Below the pieces are notes generated by a model, which saw only the letters and a list, made by a program, of their open reading frames with translations, was not told the DNA's origin and ran no database searches. This document shows positions 125-51,965 of a DNA stretch of 64,000 nucleotides, one piece after another (the first letter of the stretch is position 1; each line of letters begins with the position of its first letter). The stretch is from Perkinsela sp. CCAP 1560/9 (Eukaryota > Protista > Euglenozoa: Kinetoplastea), in the NCBI GenBank assembly GCA_965644495.1, contig CBFFSA010000010.1, positions 434,001 through 498,000 on the forward strand. Direction: 5' to 3'. The position numbers and the translations under genes were made by a program.

Positions 125-631
125 CTATCGGGGGCATACAAATGTATGTCTTGGACTGAGTCTCCGTCCCGGGCCGTAGTGTGGGGAGGGCTGGCGACGT
201 TGGGCGCGGTCGCAATGCCCTCCAAGATCGTCTCGCTGGCCAGTGGGGTGGCCCGCCCTTGGAGGGGGATTTCTATGGCGGCGTCCCGGGTTGGCTTCAA
301 TGTAGCCCCTGCGCAGGTTGCACTTGATTATATGGGCGGACCGTCCTGTTTCGCTGATGAGGGATTCGGAAGATAAGAAGCTCCATAAAATCCCGTCCTC
401 GTATTCCTTGGGCTTCCAAGCTACGGTTAGGATATCGAGAATTCCTATTTGTTTGCTGAGGAAGGCAGGGATAACATGTGCGGCTCCTATGCCCGGCGCT
501 AAGAGGCTGCCTTGGAATGTACCGTCGTACACTCGTATTGCTTTGGTGTCGATGTATCCTGTGCTGCCTGGTGGTAGGGTCAGGCGTACAGAGATCCTTT
601 GGGCGCATTTTGTTGTTGTTTTTTCATGCAC
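125..631 (-). mobile_element. N-terminal ORF of an SL-headed non-LTR retroelement, with a degenerate 2A-like motif (LRRGYIEANPGR); the element probably continues beyond the window start
   Basis: Lies downstream (minus strand) of the SL copy at 1224-1248 and the structured leader at 900-1223. About 65 aa align with the 5750-5960 copy, and similarity ends at NPG. Confidence 0.6.
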
Positions 632-1223: not shown

Positions 1224-1260
1224 CAACAAGGTACAGAAACTGTATCTTGTACAGAAACTC
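1224..1260 (-). ncRNA. Spliced-leader exon remnant (3' 25 nt), preceded by a partial duplicate of the core (AGTTTCTGTAC)
   Basis: The reverse complement of 1224-1248 is AAGATACAGTTTCTGTACCTTGTTG, matching the kinetoplastid/diplonemid SL core CAGTTTCTGTA...TTG. Confidence 0.8.
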
Positions 1261-3740
1261 TCCCGATCTGTAATGTGGGTCACTTCCCCAGATGTGTCCT
1301 TGAGGAGTAGGCTCTCGTCGGGCACCCCAATGGTATACCCCACGATCCCCAGGATGTCTGAAAAGGAGGTTGAAGCTTCGCAAGGAACTCGAATTCGTCC
1401 GGCCCGTTCGGGGCCAAGGTCTAGGGTAATGAGTATACCTTCGCCCCGTAATCCAGGGGGCTGCCCTCCTCGGGCGCGTAAATTGGCGCGAAGCTATGCG
1501 GGTGTGATCCTGGATCTGGTCCCGGTGTAGGGTTAAAGTGGAAGGCAGGGGTGTGGAAGTGGTGCTGTGGAGGTAGAGAAGTGGTGCTGTGGAGGCCATG
1601 GAGGATTTGCTTCGAGAGTGGGGAATCCTGCTGTAGGGAGTTGCGCTGCCACGAAGAAACATTCTTTGAAGAGGCTCAGGAACTCCGACCAGCCTTCTCG
1701 TTTGAGGGCGTAGGCGCCCCGGGCATGACTTCCCAAAAGTTCGTACAATGCTTTCCGAGTGCGCTTCGGGGCGTGTACGTTTAGGATGTGGGCCTGCAGG
1801 CCTATGAGGTGTTGATGTGCGGCTCCCCAGAATGTCTGAAAAAGAGGTTAATGCGTCACATGCAGACCAGTTGGGTAGCCGTTGGGGCTTTCCCTAACGC
1901 GGCCTCACAGAGGTTGCGTGGGGCTGCTCGTTGGCTTACATGCCCTGGGGTCGGCCCTGTAGGGCGTTCTTCACCTTGGCCTGCATGCCCTCGGCCTTGT
2001 GCTCGAAGGGGATGGTCCCCAGGAAATCTGCCGTCAAGAGGTGATTGGAAAACGGTATTTTTCCCAAGGAGTCCATCCCCCGGAGCAATGCCTCAGCACA
2101 TGCCAGGACGGCTGTGCCGACTTGGGCATCGGCCACTTTAGTGACCCGGGGCTCGTGGGTCCTTACGATGTAGTTCCATCGAGGACTCCCACAGAGTCTT
2201 AAGAGGGGCAAGATACACTGCCAGCTACTGTCCTTAAGTTTCCCCAAGAAGGAGATTACCTTCGGCGCCTTGGAGAGCACCCATTCTTCTTCCCTAGCCT
2301 AACCTAGCCTCCCTAGCCTAGGGCTTCCGCGCATACCTTGGGTTCACCCGCGAAGGTGACGCCGTCCAGGTACGCCCAGACCTTCAGCGTGCCTGTGAAG
2401 TTGGCCGCCACTCTGGCAATTGCCCCCTGGATCCCTATGGCAAATAGGATGGGAGCCATGGGGTCACCTTGCTTGACCCCACTTGAGTTCGTGATGGATT
2501 GGCCTTCCCCAAGGTGAAGCGTACGTGTAGTACCGTAGCTGAAGAGGGTGATGCCCTCAATGCGGAAAAGTTTCGGATCCCCCCTTACCGCCCTAAAAAT
2601 TGCCGACCGTGAGATGCTATTAAAAGCGTTCTCGAGGTCTGCCGCCACGATGACCTCCTTCGGCCTGTCCCTGAAGTGCTGTCGCACATTATAAATTATG
2701 TGCTCACACCCCTGCGTGTATTGGGCTCCAAACTGGATGCCCTGAAAGCAAGTGGGGAGATGTTCCCGGATTTTCTCCAGGCAAGGAGCCCCGCCACCTT
2801 GAGGACGCACTCTCCCATGGCGATGGGCCTGTAGGAAGAGTGGTGCCCCGCCGGGGAGTCCGGTTTGGTGAATAGTTTTAGGGACGCCCCCGTGAGCCGT
2901 TCCCTCATTGAGGGGAGTAGGGAGTTTGTCATAATCCCGTGGATTATCCACGTGATACAGTCGCAGGGTCCACCTTCCATGAGGACTGGGACAAGCAGTT
3001 CCTTGGTCCATCCCGTAGGTCCGGGGGGCGCGGATAGGGGCCAGGCTTGGGGCCTTCCTGGCCACATCGGCGGGGGAGGGTAGGGTTCCGTGTCGGTCCC
3101 TATTGTACCTGAATTTCCCCGCAATGTAGGGCCCGCCTGTGGGATGTAGTCGCTTAGCCTGTTCTAGGGCCGCCGTGGGATTGGCCGGTGGATTGAGGGG
3201 CGCCTCCATCGTTTTGGCCGTCCTAGAGAAGCAACCCGCCCTGCACAATTCCTCCACCCGTTTTTTGACGGACCACGGGGGGCCGTTGGCCTGACTCGGG
3301 GATGGAGCCAAGGTCTTCGAACTTATTCAGAGTTCGCGTGCTAGCTGTCGTTGCAACTCCGCCTATCCTCAGGGAGGTGTAGGAAACGTTTTACGGCTAA
3401 AAGGAGGTTCCAGGCCATCTCAACTTTGTCCCCCCCTGACTTATTGAGAAAGTCATGACATACACTGGCAGTGTATTCCTTCCATGCCGGGCATTGGACC
3501 GCGTAAAGTTTACTCGGGGACCCCCTCCCAAGAAGCTCCGCTAAGCTCTCGGAGGAGGGGGCTTGCCCACGCTTCTCAATTGGAGCGCCCTGGGCTATTG
3601 GGGTGGTTTGCTGGCCTTCTGTAATGCGAGATGATTCCACCATCACCGATGACCCCTTATCTAATGTCGTCCGTTGGGGAGTGCCGGTGACATTTGCTTC
3701 CGCCGCGATGGCTGGCTTCCGGCATACCCCCCCAGAGCAG
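1261..3740 (-). mobile_element. Degenerate, 5'-truncated CRE/SLACS/CZAR-like non-LTR retrotransposon (RT plus probable RLE remnant)
   Basis: RT motifs YRPIAMGE, QFG, AADLENAFNSISR, GVKQGDPMAPILF and AYLDG (YLDD decayed) are split over frameshifted ORFs 2313-3311 and 2696-3124. LLRLCGSPRWNYIVRTH follows in 1936-2280. The 3' end abuts the SL remnant. Confidence 0.85.
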
Positions 3741-5379: not shown

Positions 5380-6881
5380 CTCTTCGCCATCTGGGTGATG
5401 CAGGCCCGTCACGTCGAGCGTCCTGGAGTTGCAAATCCGCAGATCACTTTTAACGCGAAATGGACGTACTCTCGGGACCGTTTCTTGGATGGAGATCGTC
5501 ACATGATGGTATGATGTGTGTACATGATGTATGCAGATTGTATCCAGCGTAATCCTCGCTGGCATCAAGCATGACTCCCCCATGGGAAGGGGATGTGCGA
5601 TTAGGGTTCGGAGTGTAATATTCGTAGGGTAGCGGGGTGGGGGTATCCTCGAAGTGTATGCTCGTCTGGCTCGTCTGTCCCGTTGTGTTCACGAGGTTAT
5701 TATCATCGGGACAGGAGGATTTGGATGGGGTATACTTACGTTTTCCGCGACCTGGTCCCGGGTTGGCCTCGATGCACCCTCTGTGGAGCTTACACCGCAC
5801 GCACTCGGCCGACCATTCCGAGTCGGCTATCAGACCCTCCGTCGTTGTGAAGCTCCAGCATGCCATTCCGTCCTCCCACACGGACGGGGTCCAGGCTCCT
5901 GCGAAGCACTGAGCTATACCCAGGGCGTTACAAAGGAAGAAGGGGATGTGTTCATCTGGGAGATCGGATGGCGTCTCTATACTGGCCCCTGCTTCCGATC
6001 CGACGAATACGTTGCCGTGGGGTCCATGGGAGGGGCCGTGGTTTCGGGTTAGGAGAGAGGACCAAATGCACCCTGCCTTTACCAGGTCCTCATCGGTCTC
6101 CGGGTACGGCCTTCCAGTTCGTGGGTCAGGCTTCTGCCGTTGGGAGGGAACCCCAAAGTGAAACCTAATGCTTGTACGAGCCCTTGTAAGGGGTTGTAAA
6201 GGGTGCAGGGATGGGGACCTAGATGAGTCCGGCTAACTGGGGTCCGAGAAGTAAGTTGACCCTAGTCCAATTGTCTTCGGGGAGTTGCATCGAAGATGGG
6301 GGTTGGTGTCCGCCTTGCTGGTGGGGAGGGTCCGCCTTGCTTGAAGTGGGTCCTTAGTACTGGGATGAGTAAGGTCCTCTAGTGGCGTCTGTTAGGGTGT
6401 TTGTGAGGGCAGGAGGTTCGTCGGCACAGGAAGGGAGAAGGGGAGGCTCGTCCATCTCCAAATTTCGCGTTTCCGTGGGGCCTGGAGAGGGGCCAGGGGA
6501 AGTGCGTTTAGGTCCTGGAGTTCTTGATGGAGATGGCCGTAAAGGTCGGCGGCGGAGGCCCATTGATGTTCCGCAATTATCATAGCTCCCTGCCGGTGCT
6601 CTGAAGAAATACCGGATACCATCGCTTGGGACCCAAAGCAGGGTCGCACTGGATGTGTCGCAGCTCCTTGGCTGCAATAACTAGGGGTACGCCTTGCAGG
6701 CGTTCTTCGTCTTTACATGCATGTCCTCGGCCTTGTTCTCGAATGGGGTGATCCCCAGGAGATTCTCCCGTGAAAAGATAATTTGAGAACAGTGTTCAAC
6801 ACATTTGTCCAAGAGGCTCATGCCTCCGAGAAAGCCTTTAGCACATGCTAGGACGGCTGTGTTCGACATGGGTGCATGCAT
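5380..6881 (-). mobile_element. Rearranged retroelement remnant: a CRE-like post-RT segment (6681-6881) joined to an N-terminal region with an intact 2A-like motif (LHRGCIEANPGP, 5753-5788)
   Basis: 6681-6881 aligns with ORF 1936-2280 (TAVLACA...LG..PFE.KAE.M..K.KNA). 5750-5960 aligns with ORF 125-631. Confidence 0.75.
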
Positions 6882-33137: not shown

Positions 33138-33510
33138 TTGTATAAGTACAATTTGCCCTATGCATTTTTTGGCCGTCATCCTCATTTCACAAACACTTCC
33201 GGGAGCTCAACGTCACGTGCGGCAAAGGTAAGGGGCGCATTTCTTCCACAGGAATACGAACTTGAAAAGTTTATTAGCGATGTCGAAAGCCCACATGAGT
33301 CGTCGAGCACTGCCACACCTGCATATGCGTGGGATGGAGTGGTAGGCAATGACGAGGGGGAAGTTATTGTCATTGCTTGGTATGGTCGAAAATTGTGTGG
33401 GACATTGCATTGGGAACATACACGATCTGTAAAACGTTTGGATGTTTCCAACAATGCGTTGAGTGGCACTGTCGATTTTTCTTTATTGCCTCGAAGTTTG
33501 GAGAGATTAT
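33138..33510 (+). pseudogene. LRR gene truncated at the SL/retroelement junction
   Basis: AKVRGAFLPQEYEL motif, cap and one LRR, ending at LPRSLERL|. Confidence 0.88.
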
Positions 33511-33590
33511 AAAGATCATAAAGATTATAAAGATTTATAATGATTATACTTATAATCATACTTATAAAGATTATAAAGATCATAAAGATA
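33508..33590 (+). repeat. Reiterated (T/C)ATAAAGAT units derived from the SL 5' edge
   Basis: TTATAAAGATCATAAAGATTATAAAGAT...; the last unit runs into the SL core. Confidence 0.85.
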
Positions 33591-33609
33591 CAGTTTCTGT
33601 ACCTTGTTG
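33584..33609 (+). ncRNA. SL exon remnant at the 5' boundary of the retroelement
   Basis: AAAGATACAGTTTCTGTACCTTGTTG. Confidence 0.82.
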
Positions 33610-33616
33610 TCTTTTG

Positions 33617-33640
33617 TACTAACTGTTATCACCCCTACAG
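33617..33640 (+). promoter_or_regulatory. Putative branch point and 3' splice acceptor immediately before the retroelement ATG
   Basis: TACTAAC at 33617-33623, CCCCTACAG ending at 33640 and ATG at 33645. Confidence 0.5.
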
Positions 33641-33644
33641 GGGC

Positions 33645-36600
33645 ATGTCACTCCACACCACTACCTCTGCCCCCCAGGCGCAAGGCGACCTCCCTCGAGG
33701 ATCTGCTGGCGCAAAACCTTCACGCAAGCATACCTTCAACTTCACACAAAAAAGTGCGATTTCTGTAAAAATAAGACACTCAACTTCCACATCATGGCTC
33801 TATTTCCCTGACATCCACGCGGCGGCTTGTTTTCTAACCAAGAAGAGGCACTTCAATGCCGAAATTTCAGCGGAACTTTCCTTAGCACGAACCCTTGAAA
33901 CAGGAGCAAAGCGGTCTGATGGTATATTAGTAGAAAAATGCACTTTACAAGACGTAATGAACGAGGAAGCATGCGAACATTTCGTATTCCGCGAAATTGC
34001 ACCGCCACACAGGATATTCCGGCACACTAGCTGGGCGACAGCACACGCAGACGCATCTCTACAGCTAGATAAACAGTACTCTTGTCCTGGAACCCTTGGA
34101 CGCACCATCAAGAAGAAACTGGCTGGGAACAACATCTCGGGACTTGCGGCGTTCGACCTAACCCACGTCCACACTAAGGAAGTACACGATGAAGGCTCTT
34201 GGGAAAAGGCTCTTGGGAGAACTAGGATTGAGTACGGCGAACCTTTCCTGATCGGGAAGCCCAACCAGGCGGCGGGACAAGGAACGCGGACAGTGCGGCA
34301 ACAACCTTGTGCCCACCGCTGCTTGAATAAACGCACCTGTCTCCACCCGTGTTGCAAAGTTGGGATGGAACCCGAGCTCACCAACAATCGTCCAGAGGAA
34401 CCGGGTGGCCACGCACCAAACAGAAGTCATCCGCTGCCTCGTACAACGGACGAACCAACCCCCAACCACGAAGCTCGACCCAGCCGTACTCAACCGTGTG
34501 CTCATCGATGTTTGAACAAGCGCATATGCCTCCACCAATGTTGCAAGATCAGTATTGACCCCGAACCTATGGACCACCCCTCACCTCACCCAGATATGCA
34601 GAGAGCAGATAGTGCAATCCAAAAGTCTGATGCCAGGCCTGATGCTACACCATGGCTTCGAGATGAACAAACGTCTAGCACATGCGCGACACCTCGACGA
34701 TCATGTAAACACATTTGCCAAAACAAGCAACAATGTAAGCACATGTGTTGCAAGATTGGGGTAAAGATCGACCCTAGAAGACTTGAATCCCTAAACGAAG
34801 AAACAACAGTAATTGCCACCCCTCCCTCACCCGCCCCACGCACTCAGACACCGCCAGACAGAAATCTGCATCACATAACAACGTCGGAAGAACAAGAACT
34901 CTCGCGCAGGCCCTGCAAGCACGTATGCCGCAACAAGGCCGAATGCAAACACCAATGTTGTAAGGAGGGAGTACTCAGCCCCCCTCAGGACGCTCGGCAG
35001 GAACCCACCCGCTGGAGCCTACGCAACCTCTTCTCGTGGAATCTGTCTAACAACGAGACAAACGGACAAGCACCTGCTGGTCACAGCGAAAGATCCGCAT
35101 CTTCTGAGCCCCAAAGACAGGTAGAAACCAAAATAGGCGCCGCACGGAGTTCACCACGAGATCAGCGCCACGAAAGACGCTTCACAAATGCCTCCGAAGA
35201 AACCCGCATCAATCAGTCTCCACGACAACCAGCACATCCACCGGTGAACAACGTAACCTCGGAACCAGCGCCAACCTTCGGAACTGAAAGTAACACACAG
35301 ACGCTTACCCAGACTCTCCCACCGCGGGGCGGACCACGGCAGACCCACGGGCCGAATGACAGCACGATCCTGAACTCACAGAGGAATAGATCTCGAAATG
35401 AAAACATATTAGACACCGAGACGGCTGAATACTTGTTAAGCACCATGCGTACGATCGAAGGAGGGCGGGTCATGATAAGCCTCTCACAGGACCAATGGCA
35501 GCTGGCAATAAAGAAGGCCATGGATAGATGTAAAAAGTACTTAAAGCCTGCATCAACCCCGAGCGAAGCCCTACTACATACGGAATTACTGACAGCTTGC
35601 ATGGCGGTCTCGGTTTATGAAGTTGTACGGGAACTCGACCCCACCAAAGGGTTCAAATTGCGCTCCAAAATTGGCCATGCGAAACGCCCCACACGACCCC
35701 TTAGCTATGACCGCTCTGCGAAGCAACTAGCAGGACACATCCGTCAACTGAAACGTACTCTTTCCTTTACCCACGGACGCTCAGAAAGGGACCGCTTGAT
35801 CGGCAACATAAAAGAAGCGACCAAAGCGCATAAGCTGTACACGGAAGAAGCGAAACTAGTCAAACAAGAACGAGAGAAACGCTGGATGATGGACAGGTTC
35901 CAAAGAAACCCTTGGACAGCAGCCGGAGAGTGTCTTGACAAGAACGAGCAACTGGTAAATCAGCCGGCAACCTTTCCAGACTGCTCGCAAGCAGCTATCG
36001 AAACATTTTTCCAAGAATTGTTAAGCACAGACACGGAAGATCATAGTCTACCTCCAACAAACCTCCTTGGCCTGGATCTAGAGAATGCAATGGAATGGGA
36101 AGCAATCGACGTACCAACCATAGCAGTGGCAATCTCCTCGAAACGCCCCTCGGCTGCCCCAGGCTCCGATACCGTGGGAAACGCATTTCTTCGACGCTGC
36201 GAAGAGCTCTACCCGTTCATCGCGCAAGTCTTCAATGACGTACTGAAGCATTCGGTCAGCCCTCCCTATTGGAAACAGGCCGTCACCCGACTCATTCACA
36301 AAGGCGGAGCTCCCAACCAATTGTCCAACTGGAGACCCATCAGTCTTACGAGCTGCCTTGGTAAGTTACTCCACTCCATTATTGGCCACAGAATCTTGAG
36401 CCATGCTGTGACGACAGGAATAATTGACACAACCATACAAAAAGGATTTTTGCCAAACGTAAATGGAACTATCGAGCATACCCAGTCACTCTGTGAACTA
36501 TTGGACTTTCAACGACAGCATAAACGACAATACTGCCTTGGTCAATTTGACTTAAAGAACGCGTTTGGTTCTCTCCCACACTCCATTCTCTTTCAAGTCC

Positions 36601-38369
36601 TAACGTGGGCAAATGTATCACCTCAAATCATCGCGTACATCCGCTCCCTATACCATGATGCGACTATCCGGATCAAATGTTCGGAAGGGCTGACCCAACA
36701 CATCCCCGTCAAACGAGGTGTTCTCCAGGGCGACACACTATCCCCCGTACTATTCAATCTCGCCATAGAAGTGGTTCTACGACATCTCCGATCGAGCTTC
36801 CCTAGCTATGGTATTAAATGGGGCAACCAAGAGTCGTTCTTAAAAGCCTTTGCAGACGATCTGGCTATCATCACGAACTCGGCTGAAAAAATGCAACACG
36901 TGACGAACGCCCTGATGAACATGCTTTCCAGGTTAGGCATGCGCCTTAACGTACCGAAATGTCGTCTCCAACACATGTCTGTAGCAGAAGGCGGATATAA
37001 GACCCACAGACCCCGTATCTTGGCATACGGTGAGAGTATTCCCAACGTTTGCGACAAAGGAAGTCAGTTCCTAGGTATGACACTCGCGCCGGGGACCCAA
37101 CAAGGGAAAGTACTGTTCAAAAGTCTCCTAAAGCAGCTACGATTTTGGTTGAACAATGTATCCAATAGTGCCCTAGATACCCCCGCTCGTCTCTGGGCCT
37201 ATAATAACGTAATCATATCTCGCCTGCGATATGTGCTCACGGTCAATCCAGGAATGACACTAAACTTTATCCTTCGACTACAAAAATATGCGACGAGACA
37301 CATTCGAAAATGGATAAACATGGCCAAAACAGCTACGAGCGAAGTTCTGTACTCTGAACGCGGCTGGGCTCTCACCAGCCTGTCTAAGCTTTGGTTACTC
37401 TGCACAGGCACAGCAGTTGAACAGATGAAAAAATCTCGTGATCCAGCAGTGCAACAAGCGCTGAGATATCGCATCCGTCGTGAACACGACAAACGTTCTT
37501 CCGGACAAGTGCGACCAGTCGTCGAGTTGTACGACCGCAGTGGAAATCACGCATCGACACGGCAGTACATTGAACATGAATACGAAAGACATCTCTCAGA
37601 AGCTGTGCAGCGTCGAGCACCAATCGCGGGGCAGTGGTTTCGCATGGCTACAGAAGACGACCTCGCGAAAGACTTCGCTGCTGCTCTGTGCAATATTAAA
37701 AGTACGTCGCTCTCCAGACTTGCTTCATCTGTTCTGACACAGACACCGCTTCCGACCCGATCCGCCTTACACCGCTGGGGCCTCAGTTACCACACGAACC
37801 GTAAATGCCCCATTTGCTCAGAAGACGTACAAACTGTGCGCCACGTTCTAACAGGCTGCAAGGCCGCCCTGCAACAGGGGCGGTATACCTTCCGTCACAA
37901 CCTCATTCTACACGCCCTTGCAGATGCTATTCGACAATCCCCCGAAACCGCACAGTATCACTTTGACCTCGCTCACCATCAGAATCCGCCAACCTGGCTG
38001 AGCGGGCAAGAAACGTCCCTCCGACCTGATGGATGGGTCCAACTTAAGAACGGTTCTGAGTTCATACTAGAACTGACATCTCCGTGGGAGGAAAACTTTA
38101 TCTCCTCACACGAACGGAAGATGCAGAAGTATGGACATATGTATCTACAACGGAAAATGTCGAACCCAGCCACTTTTCTCCTGGCCATTGAAGTAGGTGC
38201 CAGAGGAAAGCTCAACAGCTCAACTCGAGCACTGAACTCCCTTTTTGGTGGAAACAAGACCACCGCCTCGCGATGTCGTCAGCATATGGTAACAAGAGCC
38301 CTTAGTGGCAGTTTCAAAATTTTTAATAATCGCGGCATTGAGCAGTGGAGTGAGGGCACGTGCTGGTGA
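33645..38369 (+). mobile_element. Intact single-ORF RLE-type non-LTR retrotransposon (HERO/NeSL-like): 4 Cys/His fingers, RT, CCHC and restriction-like endonuclease. The element spans ~33610-38470.
   Basis: NWRPISL, QKGF, DLKNAFGSLPH, GVLQGDTLSPVLF, AFADDL, CPIC...HVLTGC, GRYTFRHN, LRPD, ELTSPWEEN, RKMQKY and IEVGARG. The first 35 aa of the track ORF are translated repeat and SL sequence. Confidence 0.95.
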
Positions 38370-38470
38370 AGAGTTTTAAAAACCTAGGAGAAACTCGTTT
38401 TGTGCAAGGATTGCGTGCTAGTCATGCATCTTCTAGGTATCAATCTCTGCAGGTAAACTGCATGAATCAA

Positions 38471-38510
38471 AAAGATACAGTTTCTGCACCATGTTGGTAC
38501 ATTTTGCTAG
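38471..38510 (+). ncRNA. SL exon remnant plus a 14-nt GT...AG spacer
   Basis: AAAGATACAGTTTCTGCACCATGTTG|GTACATTTTGCTAG; TTG|GTA matches the SL exon/intron junction. Confidence 0.82.
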
Positions 38511-38760
38511 TCCTTCCTTTCTTTTCCCGGAAACGGGCACACATTTTCTCTTTAAATGCCCGTTTCCGGCTGACGGCTAGCAGGGACTGTCCCTCTTTGT
38601 CGTGGAAGTAGGGGACGTACTTTCGACTTTTCACCCCTCCCCGGCTCACTCCTTCAGTGAGTTTTCTTCCCTCCCGGGCCTTTCTTCCTTTCACGCCTTT
38701 CCTTCCCGGGGAGCCATGCGCCATGGTGGCCTCCCTTGAGGACCACTGGGCGTGGCTCTG
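38511..38760 (+). ncRNA. Structured SL-adjacent leader RNA, copy 2
   Basis: Perfect 13-bp stem at 38527-38539/38557-38569, plus three more hairpins homologous to 900-1223. Confidence 0.72.
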
Positions 38761-38783
38761 CCTCGTCTTATCGCGAGGCAGCG

Positions 38784-38926
38784 GTCGGTTGCAGTGCGCC
38801 CCACCGGCTGCGTAAAGAGGTGGTGAGTTGCCTGGACCACCTCTACCGACTGGGGCCGAGTCGGTTGCAGTACGCCCCTCCGGCTGCGTAAAAAGAGGGC
38901 GAGTTACCCGGACCCCCTCTACCGAC
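38784..38926 (+). repeat. Two structured 67-nt units (76-bp period)
   Basis: GTCGGTTGCAGT...GGCTGCGTAAA...TCTACCGAC at 38784-38850 and 38860-38926. Confidence 0.8.
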
Positions 38927-39029
38927 AGAGTCCGTGCCGAATTCTCCTTCGTGCGACGTCTGTTGTGAGCGGGTCATGTGCCGATGATATCGGCCGTCGC
39001 ATCAAGGGCTGTATCTCTGCGTCAATGAG

Positions 39030-39119
39030 CGCATGAACATCAACAAGATGCCATCAAATGTGTTTAGCGGGGAATTACAAGTACATTTCGAGCATCTTCC
39101 AACTGGGGTCACTATACTA
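39030..39119 (+). pseudogene. Short LRR fragment ending at an SL remnant
   Basis: SNVFSGELQVHFEHLPTGVTIL|. Confidence 0.5.
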
Positions 39120-39250
39120 AAAGATACAATTCCTGTACCTTGTTGCTCATCCTTTCTTTTCCCAGAAACAGGCATACTCTTAGCCTTTTATGTATGTCCG
39201 TTTCCGGCCGGCACTAGGGCCGGAAACTCATCTTTCCGTTGAAGAGGGGC
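39120..39250 (+). ncRNA. SL remnant (39120-39145) fused directly to a degenerate leader, copy 3
   Basis: AAAGATACAATTCCTGTACCTTGTTG|CTCATCCTTTCTTTTCCCAGAAAC...CCGGCCGGCACTA. Confidence 0.78.
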
Positions 39251-39629
39251 CGCCGCTTCGCACCCACGCGCAGCGCGTCAGACGCGCCGAGTGCCCCCGC
39301 TGGATGGACGCCGGGGAGAGCCTCTCAACGACGCTGTGTAGCCGAAAGGCTTCTTGCAGCCTCTCAACGACGCCCCCCCGCAGTGGAAGTTCAGTGCCCC
39401 CTTCACCCCCCCAGGCGCTGCAGGACCTCCCTTGACCACGCGGCGTGGTCGAATCCCTGCGTACGACCGGCGTTGAATGCGCTGTAATGGTCGTTGATAA
39501 CGGTCGTCGTACGACAGGAAGATGCTCTGCCGGCTCGCCCGGTATGAAAGTGAAAGGAATGGATGTGGCAAAGTGTCAATTCAGTGGTTTCGTGTATCTT
39601 TCGTGTCTTCAGCATTCGGCGCTTCCTCG

Positions 39630-39751
39630 TCAGGTATTCCTGGGCCGCCTGTCATTGTACATCACCCGGGACGTGACGCCATCCTCTCGGCGAGGTCGAC
39701 CGCGAAACATTTTAGTGCTACCTGAGTACACTCTTGCACAGGTTGTATCAC
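39630..39751 (+). pseudogene. Duplicated 5' fragment of LRR gene 41433
   Basis: Near-identical to about 41453-41574. Confidence 0.85.
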
Positions 39752-39779
39752 ACGTTGCGAGAGAGTACCTTTACCTGCC

Positions 39780-41326
39780 TTAAAATTCTTGAGGTTTCCG
39801 AAATTTTAACAAAATAAATTACAATGCCCTTTTTCGATCAATTGTTTCTCGCGACTTTGAAAAAGCACGCCAAATCTTCAGCTCCTCGTCATAGAAACGT
39901 TTATAGTGAAAATTAAAAAATCGGTCACGTCCCTGAATGAGCGAGGTGCAATCACCTGGAATGCGATGTATGTCACAGTTGACAGGAACAGAGTTGGTGT
40001 GATGGGTCGTATGGTCATCCGTAATTAGGGCGGTAGGGAGTTTCGAGTCATTTATTGAATCCGTATATCGGGTAAGCATTTTTTCAAATACGGGCTGGCG
40101 CATCCATCTTGTCTCCGTAGCGTCAGCATACACTTTGCTGGAAAGAGATGTAGAAAGTACCTTTACCTGCCTCAAAATTCTTGAGGTTCCGAAGTTTTCG
40201 CTTGTGACCGAAATATTATAGTGGGAGGTGAAGGATAAACCGCACCTGCCTGTATGTTCACTATTCCGGCGAGAAAAACCGTCACCGCCTCCTCTTCATT
40301 TGTTTGAGAAATCTTTTTTGATTGCAAGGATCATGCCATGCGGATCCCCATCAGGAAAAACTGAAGTTTCTTCCCCAAATAGACAAATATATTTTTATTA
40401 AATAAAATAGAAAAACGGAGTTATATAGGCGAATGCAATGCTGCGTGCACAGCTACCTCGACCAAAAGACGATTCTAGCCTCAAGACCTGCAGGTGCAAT
40501 AACACGTTTTCTCCTAAAACGCTTCCAAGACCAACCAAAAGCATAATCAAGATTTTTTTAATCAGTTCTTTCGATTTCTCGGATAAAGAGTCATCCGATC
40601 TGCTTTCGAATACTCCGTGACGTTGCATGAGTTCGAAAACAACAGATTTGTTGATAGAAATGTGTTCAGCCAACATGCATGTATGCTCAAGTTCCGCGTG
40701 TACTTTTTCTTCAGGAGCTCTGCATGCAGAATTCGGACCCCGTTCTCTTTTACGATTTCTCTCCCCACGATTGATACGTTCTTGATACCTCAGATTCTTC
40801 TTGTTTTACTTGATAAACACATTGCTCGGAAACGTCGTGCTTTTTGGAAAGCGATTTTATGGACTCACTCGATTTGCTGATCGACAGCTTGTCCTCGATC
40901 GAAAGGCTCTTTTTCGTATGATAAGGGGGTTCTGTGGCGAATGATGGGGTGGGGGTAGATGTTAAGGGGTTGGCGAGGGGTCCAACTCGGGGGGCTAGTT
41001 CTCGAGACCTAATCCATTCTATCAGGGTCCAATTGACATATCAGTGGCCCAATTGCAATAAATAGTAGTAGCAGGAAAAAAGTATCCCTGTATAAACAAT
41101 AGAAATCGACAAACTATCACGAATAATAAGCAAATACAAAAAAAATTAAATCACTCATACATACAAAAGTACCCAGTCCAAAATTTTAACTACCCCCAAA
41201 AAACGGGGTAGATACGGATTAGACAAATTCTTTGCACCTTCCCTGAAATTTTTTTTGACCTTCCAGACAAAATGGCTCTATTAAAGGGTGGGGGTCACAC
41301 GTACCCCTATTAAATAGGGGGGATAG
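39780..41326 (-). mobile_element. pogo/DDE_1 transposase pseudogene with one terminal repeat
   Basis: WMRQPVF, ALITDDHTTH and IPGDCTSLIQGRD...N..YK. The end is shared with 19856-19940. Confidence 0.8.
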
Positions 41327-41432: not shown

Positions 41433-42056
41433 ATGGCCTATATTGACGGCTGTCAGGTATTCCTGGGTCGCCTGTCGTTGTACATCGCCCGAGACGTGAC
41501 GTCATCCTCTCGGCTAGGTCGACCGCGAAACATTTTAGTGCCGCCTGAGTACACTCTTGCACAGGTTGTATCACAAGTGGTGGACCGTCATGTCAGCTGG
41601 AATACGAGCTGCCCGATCAATGAATGGATGGGGGTAACGTGTACGGAGACCGGAAATGTTGATGTGATTGCATGGAGTTTTTTAAGCCTCCGGGGAAATT
41701 TCTCCTTCAACGGTTTACCCCGCACCCTTCGACGTCTTAGTGTTGGGTTTAACGCGTTATCAGGTGAAGTAGAACTGGAAAACCTCCCCGAGAATATGGC
41801 GTATCTTTTTGCCTCCTACAATGAGTTTTATGGAGGACTCGAAATGCGATACCTCCCAAGGACCATGACTGATTTCTACTTTTCGATGAATAAGCTACAA
41901 GGTCGTGTAGACCTCTCGTCTCTTCCTCCCAACATTATACAGATTGATATTTCAAAGAACAAAGATCTCGTGGGGATTCTGAGAAAATGTGACACACCGG
42001 TTTCGCTAGTAAACTTCGATATTTCGGAAACCAAAATATCTCGACTTGCAGAATAG
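41433..42056 (+). CDS. Short LRR family protein
   Basis: RLGRPRNILVPPEYTL variant motif, EWMGVTC cap and about 4 LRRs. Confidence 0.88.
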   Translation: MAYIDGCQVFLGRLSLYIARDVTSSSRLGRPRNILVPPEYTLAQVVSQVVDRHVSWNTSCPINEWMGVTCTETGNVDVIAWSFLSLRGNFSFNGLPRTLRRLSVGFNALSGEVELENLPENMAYLFASYNEFYGGLEMRYLPRTMTDFYFSMNKLQGRVDLSSLPPNIIQIDISKNKDLVGILRKCDTPVSLVNFDISETKISRLAE

Positions 42057-51888: not shown

Positions 51889-51945
51889 ATACGAGTAGTA
51901 GTAGTACACTACGAGTACGAGAAAGGTAGAAAAACTACTCATACG

Positions 51946-51965
51946 ATAAAGATACCGTTTCTGTA
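51946..51965 (+). ncRNA. Isolated SL core remnant
   Basis: ATAAAGATACCGTTTCTGTA, 19/20 identical to 33582-33601. Confidence 0.6.

What the first reader, a model, noticed from the sequence alone, without database searches (positions are those of the whole stretch)
33508..39250. Dispersed spliced-leader exons acting as self-regenerating landing pads for stacked retroelements
Seen: the 3' ~26 nt of an SL exon occur at 33584, 38471, 39120 and 1224-1248 (minus), with a shorter core at 51946, all outside any SL RNA gene array. Four copies sit exactly at retroelement boundaries, giving stacks such as SL-[RT/RLE element]-SL-[leader]...SL-[leader] and, on the minus strand, [CRE-like]-SL-[leader-2A ORF]. 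All copies lack the first ~12-13 nt of a 39-nt exon. Known: SLACS, CZAR and CRE1 insert near nt 11-12 of the SL exon within SL arrays and duplicate the downstream exon part. Inference: each element carries an SL exon at its 5' end (by trans-splicing or target duplication), so each insertion plants a new target. At least two distinct RLE clades then use these targets, spreading SL-specific retroelements into an LRR gene cluster.
Basis: partly seen in the sequence, partly recalled or inferred. Interest (0 to 1): 0.9.

Follow-up and report, generated by a model that had tools for sequence, protein, structure and literature searches.

The report
Spliced-leader-headed retrotransposons piled in LRR gene
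The spliced-leader pieces are real, but they are the copied 5' ends of trans-spliced retrotransposon RNAs; the elements here aim at one fixed spot in leucine-rich-repeat genes, so the pieces are probably not the "landing pads" that attract further insertions.

Summary
Four copies of the 3' 24-28 nt of the host spliced leader (SL) lie at the stated places, each at the 5' end of a retroelement; none is expected by chance.

The true SL RNA gene is elsewhere. Its 38-nt exon ends in GTTG and is followed by GTATGAG. In the window each relic is joined at the exact exon end to an element's own 5' UTR, so it was copied from trans-spliced RNA.

The landing-pad reading is not supported for these elements.
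- The window holds one true stack. A young R2-like LINE (E1, 98-99% identical to its siblings) abuts the head of an old SINE (A1, at most 92% to any other copy).
- A2 is not stacked on A1. It lies 75 bp further on, at the same position of the next LRR unit.
- Genome-wide, 3 of about 92 E1/A tails abut an SL relic, and all 3 lie at the LRR target (after LPxxLxxL).
- No such tail abuts any of the 327 long SL heads, a count that includes the 8 intron-bearing SL copies.
- Solitary copies show the same nt 11-13 truncation, so it is not an insertion scar.

Reuse of one LRR target is the best explanation. Earlier reports of this scan described SL-headed elements and the LRR target on other DNA of this genome.

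The parts
33138..33512 (+). 5' part of an LRR gene, interrupted just after ...LPRSLERL (the target site)
   Evidence: ORF translation; the same LPxxLxxL context is found at other insertions
33508..33581 (+). 5' junction 'stutter': about 8 units of ATAAAGAT(T/C), which is SL nt 11-18, with a short inverted stretch in the middle. It overlaps the LRR end ...AGATTA, which shares AGAT with the SL
   Evidence: family D1, period 9. It is present with no differences in contigs of independent read sets (records 1 and 9). Similar junction stutters occur in other copies
33582..33609 (+). SL relic, nt 11-38, exact: the head of LINE E1
   Evidence: compared with the SL gene
33610..38470 (+). E1, an R2-like LINE. 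It has a 35-nt 5' UTR, an intact ORF at 33645-38369 (1574 aa), and a 3' UTR ending ...ATCTCTGCAGGTAAACTGCATGAATCA. The ORF carries four CxHxCxNKxxCxHxCCK motifs, an RT, a CCHC knuckle and a C-terminal RLE-like region.
   Evidence: Pfam RVT_1 2.7e-31. Aligns to solved R2 proteins from the RT almost to their C-terminus. 98-99% identical siblings. 9 such tails in the genome.
38471..38496 (+). SL relic, nt 13-38, 2 mismatches: the head of SINE A1, directly abutting the E1 tail
38497..39044 (+). A1, a non-coding partner element of an old subfamily. It has a long hairpin (CCGGAAACGGGCA...TGCCCGTTTCCGG), an internal 76-nt duplication, and a tail ATCTCTGCGTCAATGAGCGCATGAACATCAA shared with E1.
39045..39119 (+). 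The LRR gene resumes (about NKMPSNVFSGELQVHFEHLPTGVTIL): one LRR unit, ending at the same repeat position as 33512
   Evidence: Direct translation; LRR flag (LPTGVTIL, 7 nt from the relic)
39120..39145 (+). SL relic, nt 13-38, 2 mismatches: the head of A2
39146..39560 (+). A2, a re-spliced SINE variant in which the SL is joined directly to ctcatcc, skipping the gtac...ag segment. Its 3' end and the rest of the LRR gene are missing or rearranged.
   Evidence: 39629-39755 duplicates 41452-41578
1224..1260 (-). SL relic (nt 15-38) preceded by a partial SL copy (AGTTTCTGTAC): the head of another re-spliced SINE variant
51943..51965 (+). Orphan inner SL piece (nt 8-30, 1 mismatch) beside a (TAC)n repeat, with no element attached

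Best explanation
The organism is kinetoplastid-like. Its 38-nt spliced leader is AACTTTAACGATAAAGATACAGTTTCTGTACCTTGTTG.

E1 is a site-specific R2-like (RLE) LINE, and the A elements are its non-coding partners. They share its 3' tail, so E1's protein probably copies them. Their RNAs are trans-spliced like any mRNA of this cell. Target-primed reverse transcription copies the RNA, leader included, into DNA. With this machinery the copy ends at leader nt 11-13, so each new insertion begins with a 26-28-nt SL relic.

About 40% of the insertions go to one position of LRR genes, 0-2 codons after LPxxLxxL. Others go to (GT)n repeats or to varied sites.

The pile at 33.5-39.6 kb arose in steps:
1. 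An old SINE (A1) entered one LRR unit.
2. A second SINE (A2) entered the same position of the next unit.
3. Much later the young LINE E1 used the first site again. It landed between the LRR flank and A1's head, leaving a slippage stutter at its 5' junction.

Shown: the relics, the SL gene, the element anatomy, the LRR site, the relative ages, and the rarity of tail-to-relic junctions. Inferred: trans-splicing as the source of the relics (no RNA data), mobilisation of A by E1, and recognition of the LRR flank rather than the relic.
For: SL gene and relics
- Exon plus GTATGAG intron in a 297-bp repeat beside a 5S gene.
- The SL 20-mer has 549 hits, of which only 8 carry the intron.
- In 77 of the 85 relics read, the exon end is joined directly to an element 5' UTR; the other 8 are the intron-bearing copies.
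- 5 of 40 short heads use an alternative AG acceptor.

E1 and the A elements
- E1 aligns to solved R2 proteins from the RT to near their C-terminus.
- Its nearest named relative is R2-type, and no CRE/SLACS protein appears among the hits.
- E1 and A tails share the invariant blocks ATCTCTGC and GCATGA.

LRR target
- 14 of 40 short heads are flagged automatically as LRR-flanked, against 7.5% of control positions; about 3 more are hidden by stutters.
- The LRR reading frame resumes after the tails.

Stacks are rare
- 83 A tails and 9 E1 tails exist, but only 3 abut a relic.
- All 3 are flanked by the two halves of an LRR gene.
- E1's sibling and E1-like elements on other contigs have plain flanks.

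Ages
- E1 is 98-99% identical to its siblings.
- A1 is at most 92% identical to any other copy, its subfamily is 91-93% alike, and its relic has 2 mismatches.
Against: - No RNA data could be had, so trans-splicing of these element RNAs is inferred from DNA alone.
- Three double hits may be more than equal-chance reuse of several thousand LRR sites would give. Occupied sites may therefore be somewhat favoured, or may simply be the best-matching sites.
- All 3 stacks put the newcomer exactly at the relic's 5' edge, at ATCA(A)AAAGATACAG, and carry extra partial SL copies upstream. This could mean that the relic takes part in the junction.
- The constant nt 11-13 start is unexplained, and it coincides with the nt 11/12 site of CRE-clade elements.
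Confidence: 0.68

Rival explanations
1. Landing pad. The E1/A endonuclease recognises the SL relic, nicks near nt 12/13, and so inserts newcomers at the heads of residents. Each insertion then plants a new target.
For: Three tail-to-head junctions share the same join, ATCA(A)AAAGATACAG. The newcomer is always upstream of the resident. By my rough estimate the per-site hit rate of occupied LRR sites is a few-fold above that of empty ones. The relic start resembles the nt 11/12 site of SLACS and CZAR (PMC5814959).
Against: Only 3 of about 92 tails abut a relic, and all 3 are in LRR sites, although LRR-located short heads are only about 13-20% of all relics. None of the 327 long heads, a count that includes the 8 intron-bearing SL copies, has an E1/A tail in front. 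Solitary copies have the same truncation. Other E1-family copies sit in plain DNA or in (GT)n.
Confidence: 0.13
2. One-event chimera. While copying A1 RNA, the reverse transcriptase reached its 5' end, jumped to the 3' end of an E1 RNA, and so inserted E1-A1 together at one LRR nick.
For: Template switching is evident in this genome. There are junction stutters that include duplicated target sequence. There are also SL RNA retro-pseudogenes joined to other sequence. In the two other stacks both partners are young, 98-99% identical to their relatives.
Against: In the window E1 is young and its ORF is intact. A1 is at most 92% identical to any copy, and its relic carries 2 of 26 mismatches. One event would give both elements the same age.
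Confidence: 0.06
3. The relics are target-site duplications or remains of SL RNA genes, into which SL-specific (CRE-like) elements inserted before the whole block moved into the LRR cluster.
For: CRE-clade elements insert at nt 11/12 of the SL and duplicate target sequence (PMC5814959, PMC12278014). A degenerate RT element lies on the minus strand at about 1855-3400.
Against: No relic in the window is followed by intron bases, and none is preceded by SL nt 1-10 or by the SL promoter. The LRR reading frame continues across the insertions. E1 is R2-like and has no poly(A) tail.
Confidence: 0.03

Closest known systems
R2 and related site-specific RLE LINEs (R2Bm, R2Tg; solved structures 8gh6, 9dou, 9nl3)
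   Same: A single ORF with N-terminal cysteine-rich motifs, an RT, a CCHC knuckle and a C-terminal restriction-like endonuclease region. Insertion at one defined position of a multicopy target. No long poly(A) tail. Untidy 5' junctions. Non-coding partners sharing the 3' end.
   Different: The target is a codon boundary of a protein-coding LRR family, with some insertions in (GT)n, rather than 28S rDNA. The RNA 5' end carries a trans-spliced leader rather than a ribozyme-processed co-transcript, and no HDV-like ribozyme was detected.
CRE clade of trypanosomatids (SLACS, CZAR, CRE1/2)
   Same: RLE LINEs of kinetoplastids that are physically linked to spliced-leader sequence. The relic starts near nt 11-13, close to their nt 11/12 insertion site (PMC5814959, PMC12278014).
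   Different: In those elements the SL is the target: it flanks the element as part of an SL RNA gene, intron included, and the elements end in poly(A). Here the SL is part of the element's own 5' end, joined at the exon end. SL genes are not interrupted, and the tail is ...ATCAAAA.
Relict spliced leaders of dinoflagellate retrogenes
   Same: A DNA copy of the leader at the 5' end marks a sequence as reverse-transcribed from trans-spliced mRNA, and repeated splicing and copying leaves traces (PMC6050394, PMC5585692).
   Different: Those are host retrogenes. Here the tagged sequences are the retrotransposons themselves and their SINEs, in a kinetoplastid-like genome, with a family-specific 5' truncation.

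Membership tests
CRE clade (SL-specific RLE LINEs) | Insertion at a fixed position (nt 11/12) inside SL RNA genes | tested here: not met
   All 8 intron-bearing SL copies are uninterrupted. E1/A flanks are LRR genes, (GT)n or varied DNA.
CRE clade (SL-specific RLE LINEs) | Poly(A) 3' tail and target-site duplication | tested here: not met
   The tail is ...GCATGAA(T/C)ATCAAAA, and no duplication flanks the solitary LRR insertions.
CRE clade (SL-specific RLE LINEs) | RT sequence closest to CRE/SLACS/CZAR proteins | tested here: inconclusive
   Most of the 120 best hits are unnamed. The named ones are R2-type or hypothetical, and none is called CRE/SLACS. No tree was built.
R2-like RLE LINE | RT followed by a CCHC knuckle and a C-terminal PD-(D/E)xK endonuclease | tested here: met
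   The alignment to R2 chains 9nl3_A and 9dou_A runs from the RT to within about 15 residues of their C-termini. The motifs CPICSEDVQTVRHVLTGC and RPD...ELT are visible in the ORF. The C-terminal part alone gave no PDB hit, so the catalytic residues are inferred.
R2-like RLE LINE | Sequence-specific insertion at one site of a repeated target | tested here: met
   About 40% of short-headed copies lie 0-2 codons after LPxxLxxL of LRR genes, against 7.5% of control positions. The specificity is not absolute.
R2-like RLE LINE | Insertion in 28S rDNA, with the 5' end made by an HDV-like ribozyme | tested here: not met
   The target is LRR genes, and there is no ribozyme family hit in 33400-39800.
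SL-tagged retrocopies (dinoflagellate type) | Leader DNA joined at the exact exon end to the transcript's 5' UTR, without intron | tested here: met
SL-tagged retrocopies (dinoflagellate type) | The leader is present on the RNA of the copied gene | not testable with these tools
   No RNA run holds the region.

The most novel reading that the evidence does not exclude
Relic leaders, or the ends of resident elements in general, do bias where the next element lands, so arrays regenerate their own target. Two forms are not excluded. First, occupied LRR sites may be several-fold preferred by E1/A because the newcomer's anti-leader cDNA can pair with the resident's relic. Second, among the poly(A) families, whose near-full leaders are preceded by a poly(A) tail in about one third of cases, chains may grow by directed insertion at leader heads or at poly(A) tails, rather than by RNA-to-RNA template jumps.
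Probability: 0.15. Interest if true: 0.8.

Novelty: new variant of a known kind. Interest (0 to 1): 0.5.

Why it matters
In kinetoplastids the known link between retrotransposons and the spliced leader is that CRE-clade elements insert into SL genes. Here the link runs the other way. The elements' own DNA copies begin with the leader, a direct DNA record that trans-spliced RNA was the transposition template. My searches found this reported only for dinoflagellate retrogenes.

It also shows an R2-type element aimed at a codon boundary of a very large LRR gene family, which makes it a steady source of LRR gene disruption. Separating 'the leader is carried' from 'the leader is the target' keeps SL-targeting from being inferred wrongly in this genome.

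Tried and rejected
- Rfam scan of 33400-39800 for an HDV-like or other ribozyme that could set the nt 11-13 start: only chance-level hits.
- RNA evidence: no RNA run holds the region. Short-read contigs of four runs from one study confirm the 33300-33608 junction. They collapse at the repeats and show no empty or filled alleles.
Later searches gave coordinates only. I did not try to read flanks by other means.
- PDB search with E1's C-terminal 389 aa alone: no hit.
- Pfam on ORFs of the poly(A) families: little beyond RNase H.
- Test of 'the CRE-like element ends at an SL relic': the homology shared by about 20 copies ends at window 1855, and no copy has an SL core within 30 nt of that end. 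This is a weak negative, since it relied on an exact anchor.
- 'The relic is simply inherited, not re-acquired': rejected as the sole explanation. At least five different SL/5'UTR junctions in different families all start at nt 11-13.
- Literature search for this SL sequence: nothing found.
Full report
**1. Observation**

The 23-mer GATACAGTTTCTGTACCTTGTTG occurs four times in the window. It is exact at 33587-33609 (+) and at 1224-1246 (-). It has two mismatches at 38474-38496 (+) and at 39123-39145 (+). None of 100 shuffles gave a match. A 23-nt inner piece lies at 51943-51965.

In the whole 21-Mb assembly the 20-mer ACAGTTTCTGTACCTTGTTG (up to 1 mismatch) has 549 hits, and the reversed control has none.

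**2. The real spliced leader**

At G000:C1:661.3k two copies of a 297-bp repeat carry ...cccttgtt|AACTTTAACGATAAAGATACAGTTTCTGTACCTTGTTG|GTATGAGAAGC... beside a 5S rRNA gene. Only 8 places in the genome have the exon-intron junction. Six of these are retro-copies of the SL RNA itself. They start at nt 3-5, end at GGGGCTT plus a short A run, and lack the promoter region.

The motif is therefore the 3' part of a 38-nt kinetoplastid-type leader. The CAGTTTCTGTAC core is conserved in kinetoplastid leaders (from my own knowledge). None of the window's copies belongs to an SL gene.

**3. Anatomy of 33.1-39.6 kb**

- An LRR gene (33138-33512) breaks off after ...LPRSLERL.
- A 74-bp run of ATAAAGAT(T/C) units follows.
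- Then comes an exact relic of SL nt 11-38 (33582-33609), followed by a 35-nt UTR.
- An intact 1574-aa ORF follows (33645-38369), with an RT domain (Pfam, 2.7e-31).
- Its C-terminal 889 aa align to solved R2 proteins from the RT to within about 15 residues of their ends. The nearest named database relative is R2-type.
- This element, E1, ends ...ATCTCTGCAGGTAAACTGCATGAATCA at 38470.
- It directly abuts a second relic (38471-38496, nt 13-38). That relic heads a 573-bp non-coding element, A1, whose tail ...ATCTCTGCGTCAATGAGCGCATGAACATCAA shares invariant blocks with E1's tail.
- The LRR frame then resumes for one unit (39045-39119, ...NVFSGELQVHFEHLPTGVTIL).
- The third relic (39120-39145) heads A2.

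So E1/A1 is a true stack inside one LRR site. A2 occupies the same position of the next LRR unit and is not stacked on A1. Downstream of A2 the LRR gene does not resume.

**4. Source of the relics**

In all 85 relic loci I could read, the leader is followed right at the exon end by one of two things. It is either the intron (the 8 gene or pseudogene copies) or an element-specific UTR, never partial intron.

Related A copies differ by SL|gtacattttccctttag|ttcatc versus SL|ttcatc. The second form skips a pyrimidine-rich stretch ending in AG, which is what trans-splicing at a downstream acceptor would produce. Five of 40 short heads, among them A2 and the 1224 copy, are of this re-spliced kind.

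Together these are the signature of reverse transcription of trans-spliced RNA, not of target duplication. RNA proof was not available.

**5. Two head classes**

Long heads run from nt 2-5 to nt 38. There are 327 hits, belonging to poly(A)-tailed families.

Short heads start at nt 11-16 and number about 220 by difference. They belong to E1, its relatives and the A SINEs.

At least five different SL/UTR junctions all start at nt 11-13. These include E1, two E1-like families on other contigs at 65% and 42% protein identity, and two A types. The truncation is therefore made anew by this machinery. I cannot explain it, and no ribozyme family matches.

**6. Test of the landing-pad idea**

- There are 83 A-type tails and 9 E1-type tails in the genome.
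- Only three are joined to a relic: the window's, L031 and L033. All have the same join, ATCA(A)AAAGATACAG. A further composite has 18 nt in between and is repeated in tandem. One unread C19 match, with about 22 nt between GCATGA and the SL part, was not counted.
- All three stacks lie between the two halves of an LRR gene, after LPxxLxxL.
- No such tail precedes a long head or an SL gene or pseudogene.
- Solitary copies flanked by LRR genes, (GT)n or other DNA have the same nt 11-13 start, so the truncation is not a scar left by another element's insertion.
- Fourteen of 40 short heads are flagged automatically as lying after an LPxxLxxL motif, against 7.5% of control positions. About three more are hidden by stutters. 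The LRR frame continues after the tails.
- E1's sibling at C1:2438877 ends ...GCATGAATATCAAAA|GCGTGTG, which is plain DNA. An E1-like element in L093 sits inside (GT)n.

**7. Order of events**

E1 is 98-99% identical to four or five siblings, and its ORF is intact. A1 is at most 92% identical to any copy. Its subfamily is 91-93% alike, whereas the young A subfamily is 98.5-99.5% alike. A1's relic has 2 mismatches.

E1 therefore arrived long after A1, at the LRR/A1 boundary. This excludes a single chimeric event in the window. In L031 and L033 both partners are young, so a template jump is not excluded there.

**8. The stutter**

Junction stutters that mix SL nt 11-18 with duplicated target sequence also occur in solitary copies. 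They point to template switching when the 5' junction is made. In the window the LRR end ...GAGAGATTA shares AGAT with the leader's AAAGATA, which would allow slippage. All three stacks carry such partial SL copies, against about 5 of 38 solitary heads. This may reflect pairing between the newcomer's cDNA and the resident's relic, and I count it in favour of the minority reading.

**9. The minus-strand case**

The homology shared by about 20 copies of the RT element at about 1855-3400 ends at 1855. The bases 1542-1261 in front of the relic match nothing else in the genome. No copy of that family has an SL core within 30 nt of its common end. A second RLE clade using relics is therefore not shown.

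**10. Comparison and verdict**

CRE-clade elements insert at nt 11/12 of SL genes and carry poly(A) tails (PMC5814959, PMC12278014). E1 and the A elements fail both tests. They fit R2-type architecture and behaviour, with a new target and an SL-tagged 5' end. The tag itself is known from dinoflagellate retrogenes (PMC6050394, PMC5585692). My searches found no report of it for kinetoplastid mobile elements.

Earlier reports of this scan on other DNA of this genome reached similar readings (SL-headed elements, the LRR target). I re-tested these points here.

The landing-pad mechanism is the weak part of the finding. I give it about 0.13 for these elements.

Noticed in passing
genome-wide; e.g. 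L009 (C1:1440955-1443974), L074, L076, L081: About a third of the long SL heads are directly preceded by a poly(A) run (55 of 148 on the reverse strand). Units are chained head-to-tail, for example LINE, then a 660-bp element, then another LINE. The join is always at the very 5' end of the copied leader, with variable extra bases (TC, CTC, GATC, CAC, G). This fits insertion into older poly(A) tails or RNA-to-RNA template jumps better than a fixed cut inside the leader, but it was not settled.
   Followed up: partly
long heads in L009-L022, L072-L091: Most long heads read TCTTTAACG where the SL gene has ACTTTAACG (nt 2 read as T). This could be misreading of a modified cap nucleotide by the reverse transcriptase, or a second SL gene variant missing from the assembly.
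   Followed up: no
L034, L037-L041: There are six retro-copies of the unspliced SL RNA (exon plus intron, ending GGGGCTT plus a short A run). Three are joined to a GGAGGTGGCGGAG-type repeat. Only two promoter-bearing SL genes are in the assembly, next to a 5S rRNA gene.
   Followed up: partly
window 34326-34964: E1's N-terminal half carries four spaced repeats of a CxHxCxNKxxCxHxCCK cysteine/histidine motif (period 189-210 nt). This is a candidate DNA-binding array for target choice.
   Followed up: no
L052 (C1:3069.7k), L093: (GT)n microsatellites are a second recurrent target. An A SINE and an E1-like LINE (42% identity) each sit with (GT)n on both sides.
   Followed up: no
window 5450-5881 (-) and 125-631 (-): ORFs there contain 2A-like peptides (CIEANPGP, YIEANPG), as known from trypanosome LINEs.
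   Followed up: no
L042-L045 (C1:394-407k): An A-type tail fragment, then 18 nt, then a deeply truncated leader (nt 24-37) heading another element. The composite is repeated four times with a period of about 5.2 kb, and it is not in an LRR context.
   Followed up: partly
window 38471-38600: In A1 the relic's AAAGA..ACAGU..CUGC can pair with a downstream GCAG..ACUGU..UCUUU around a long perfect hairpin (fold z-score -3.8). The ACUGUCCCUCUU partner recurs in the two other A copies I compared by eye (the L031 and L033 downstream elements). Covariation was not tested.
   Followed up: no
window 39629-39755 and 41452-41578: A 127-bp duplicate (93% identical) of an LRR gene's N-terminal region lies right after A2, so the interrupted LRR gene has lost its 3' part through a rearrangement.
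   Followed up: no
window 51943-51965: An orphan inner leader piece (nt 8-30, 1 mismatch) beside a (TAC)n repeat, with no element attached.
   Followed up: no
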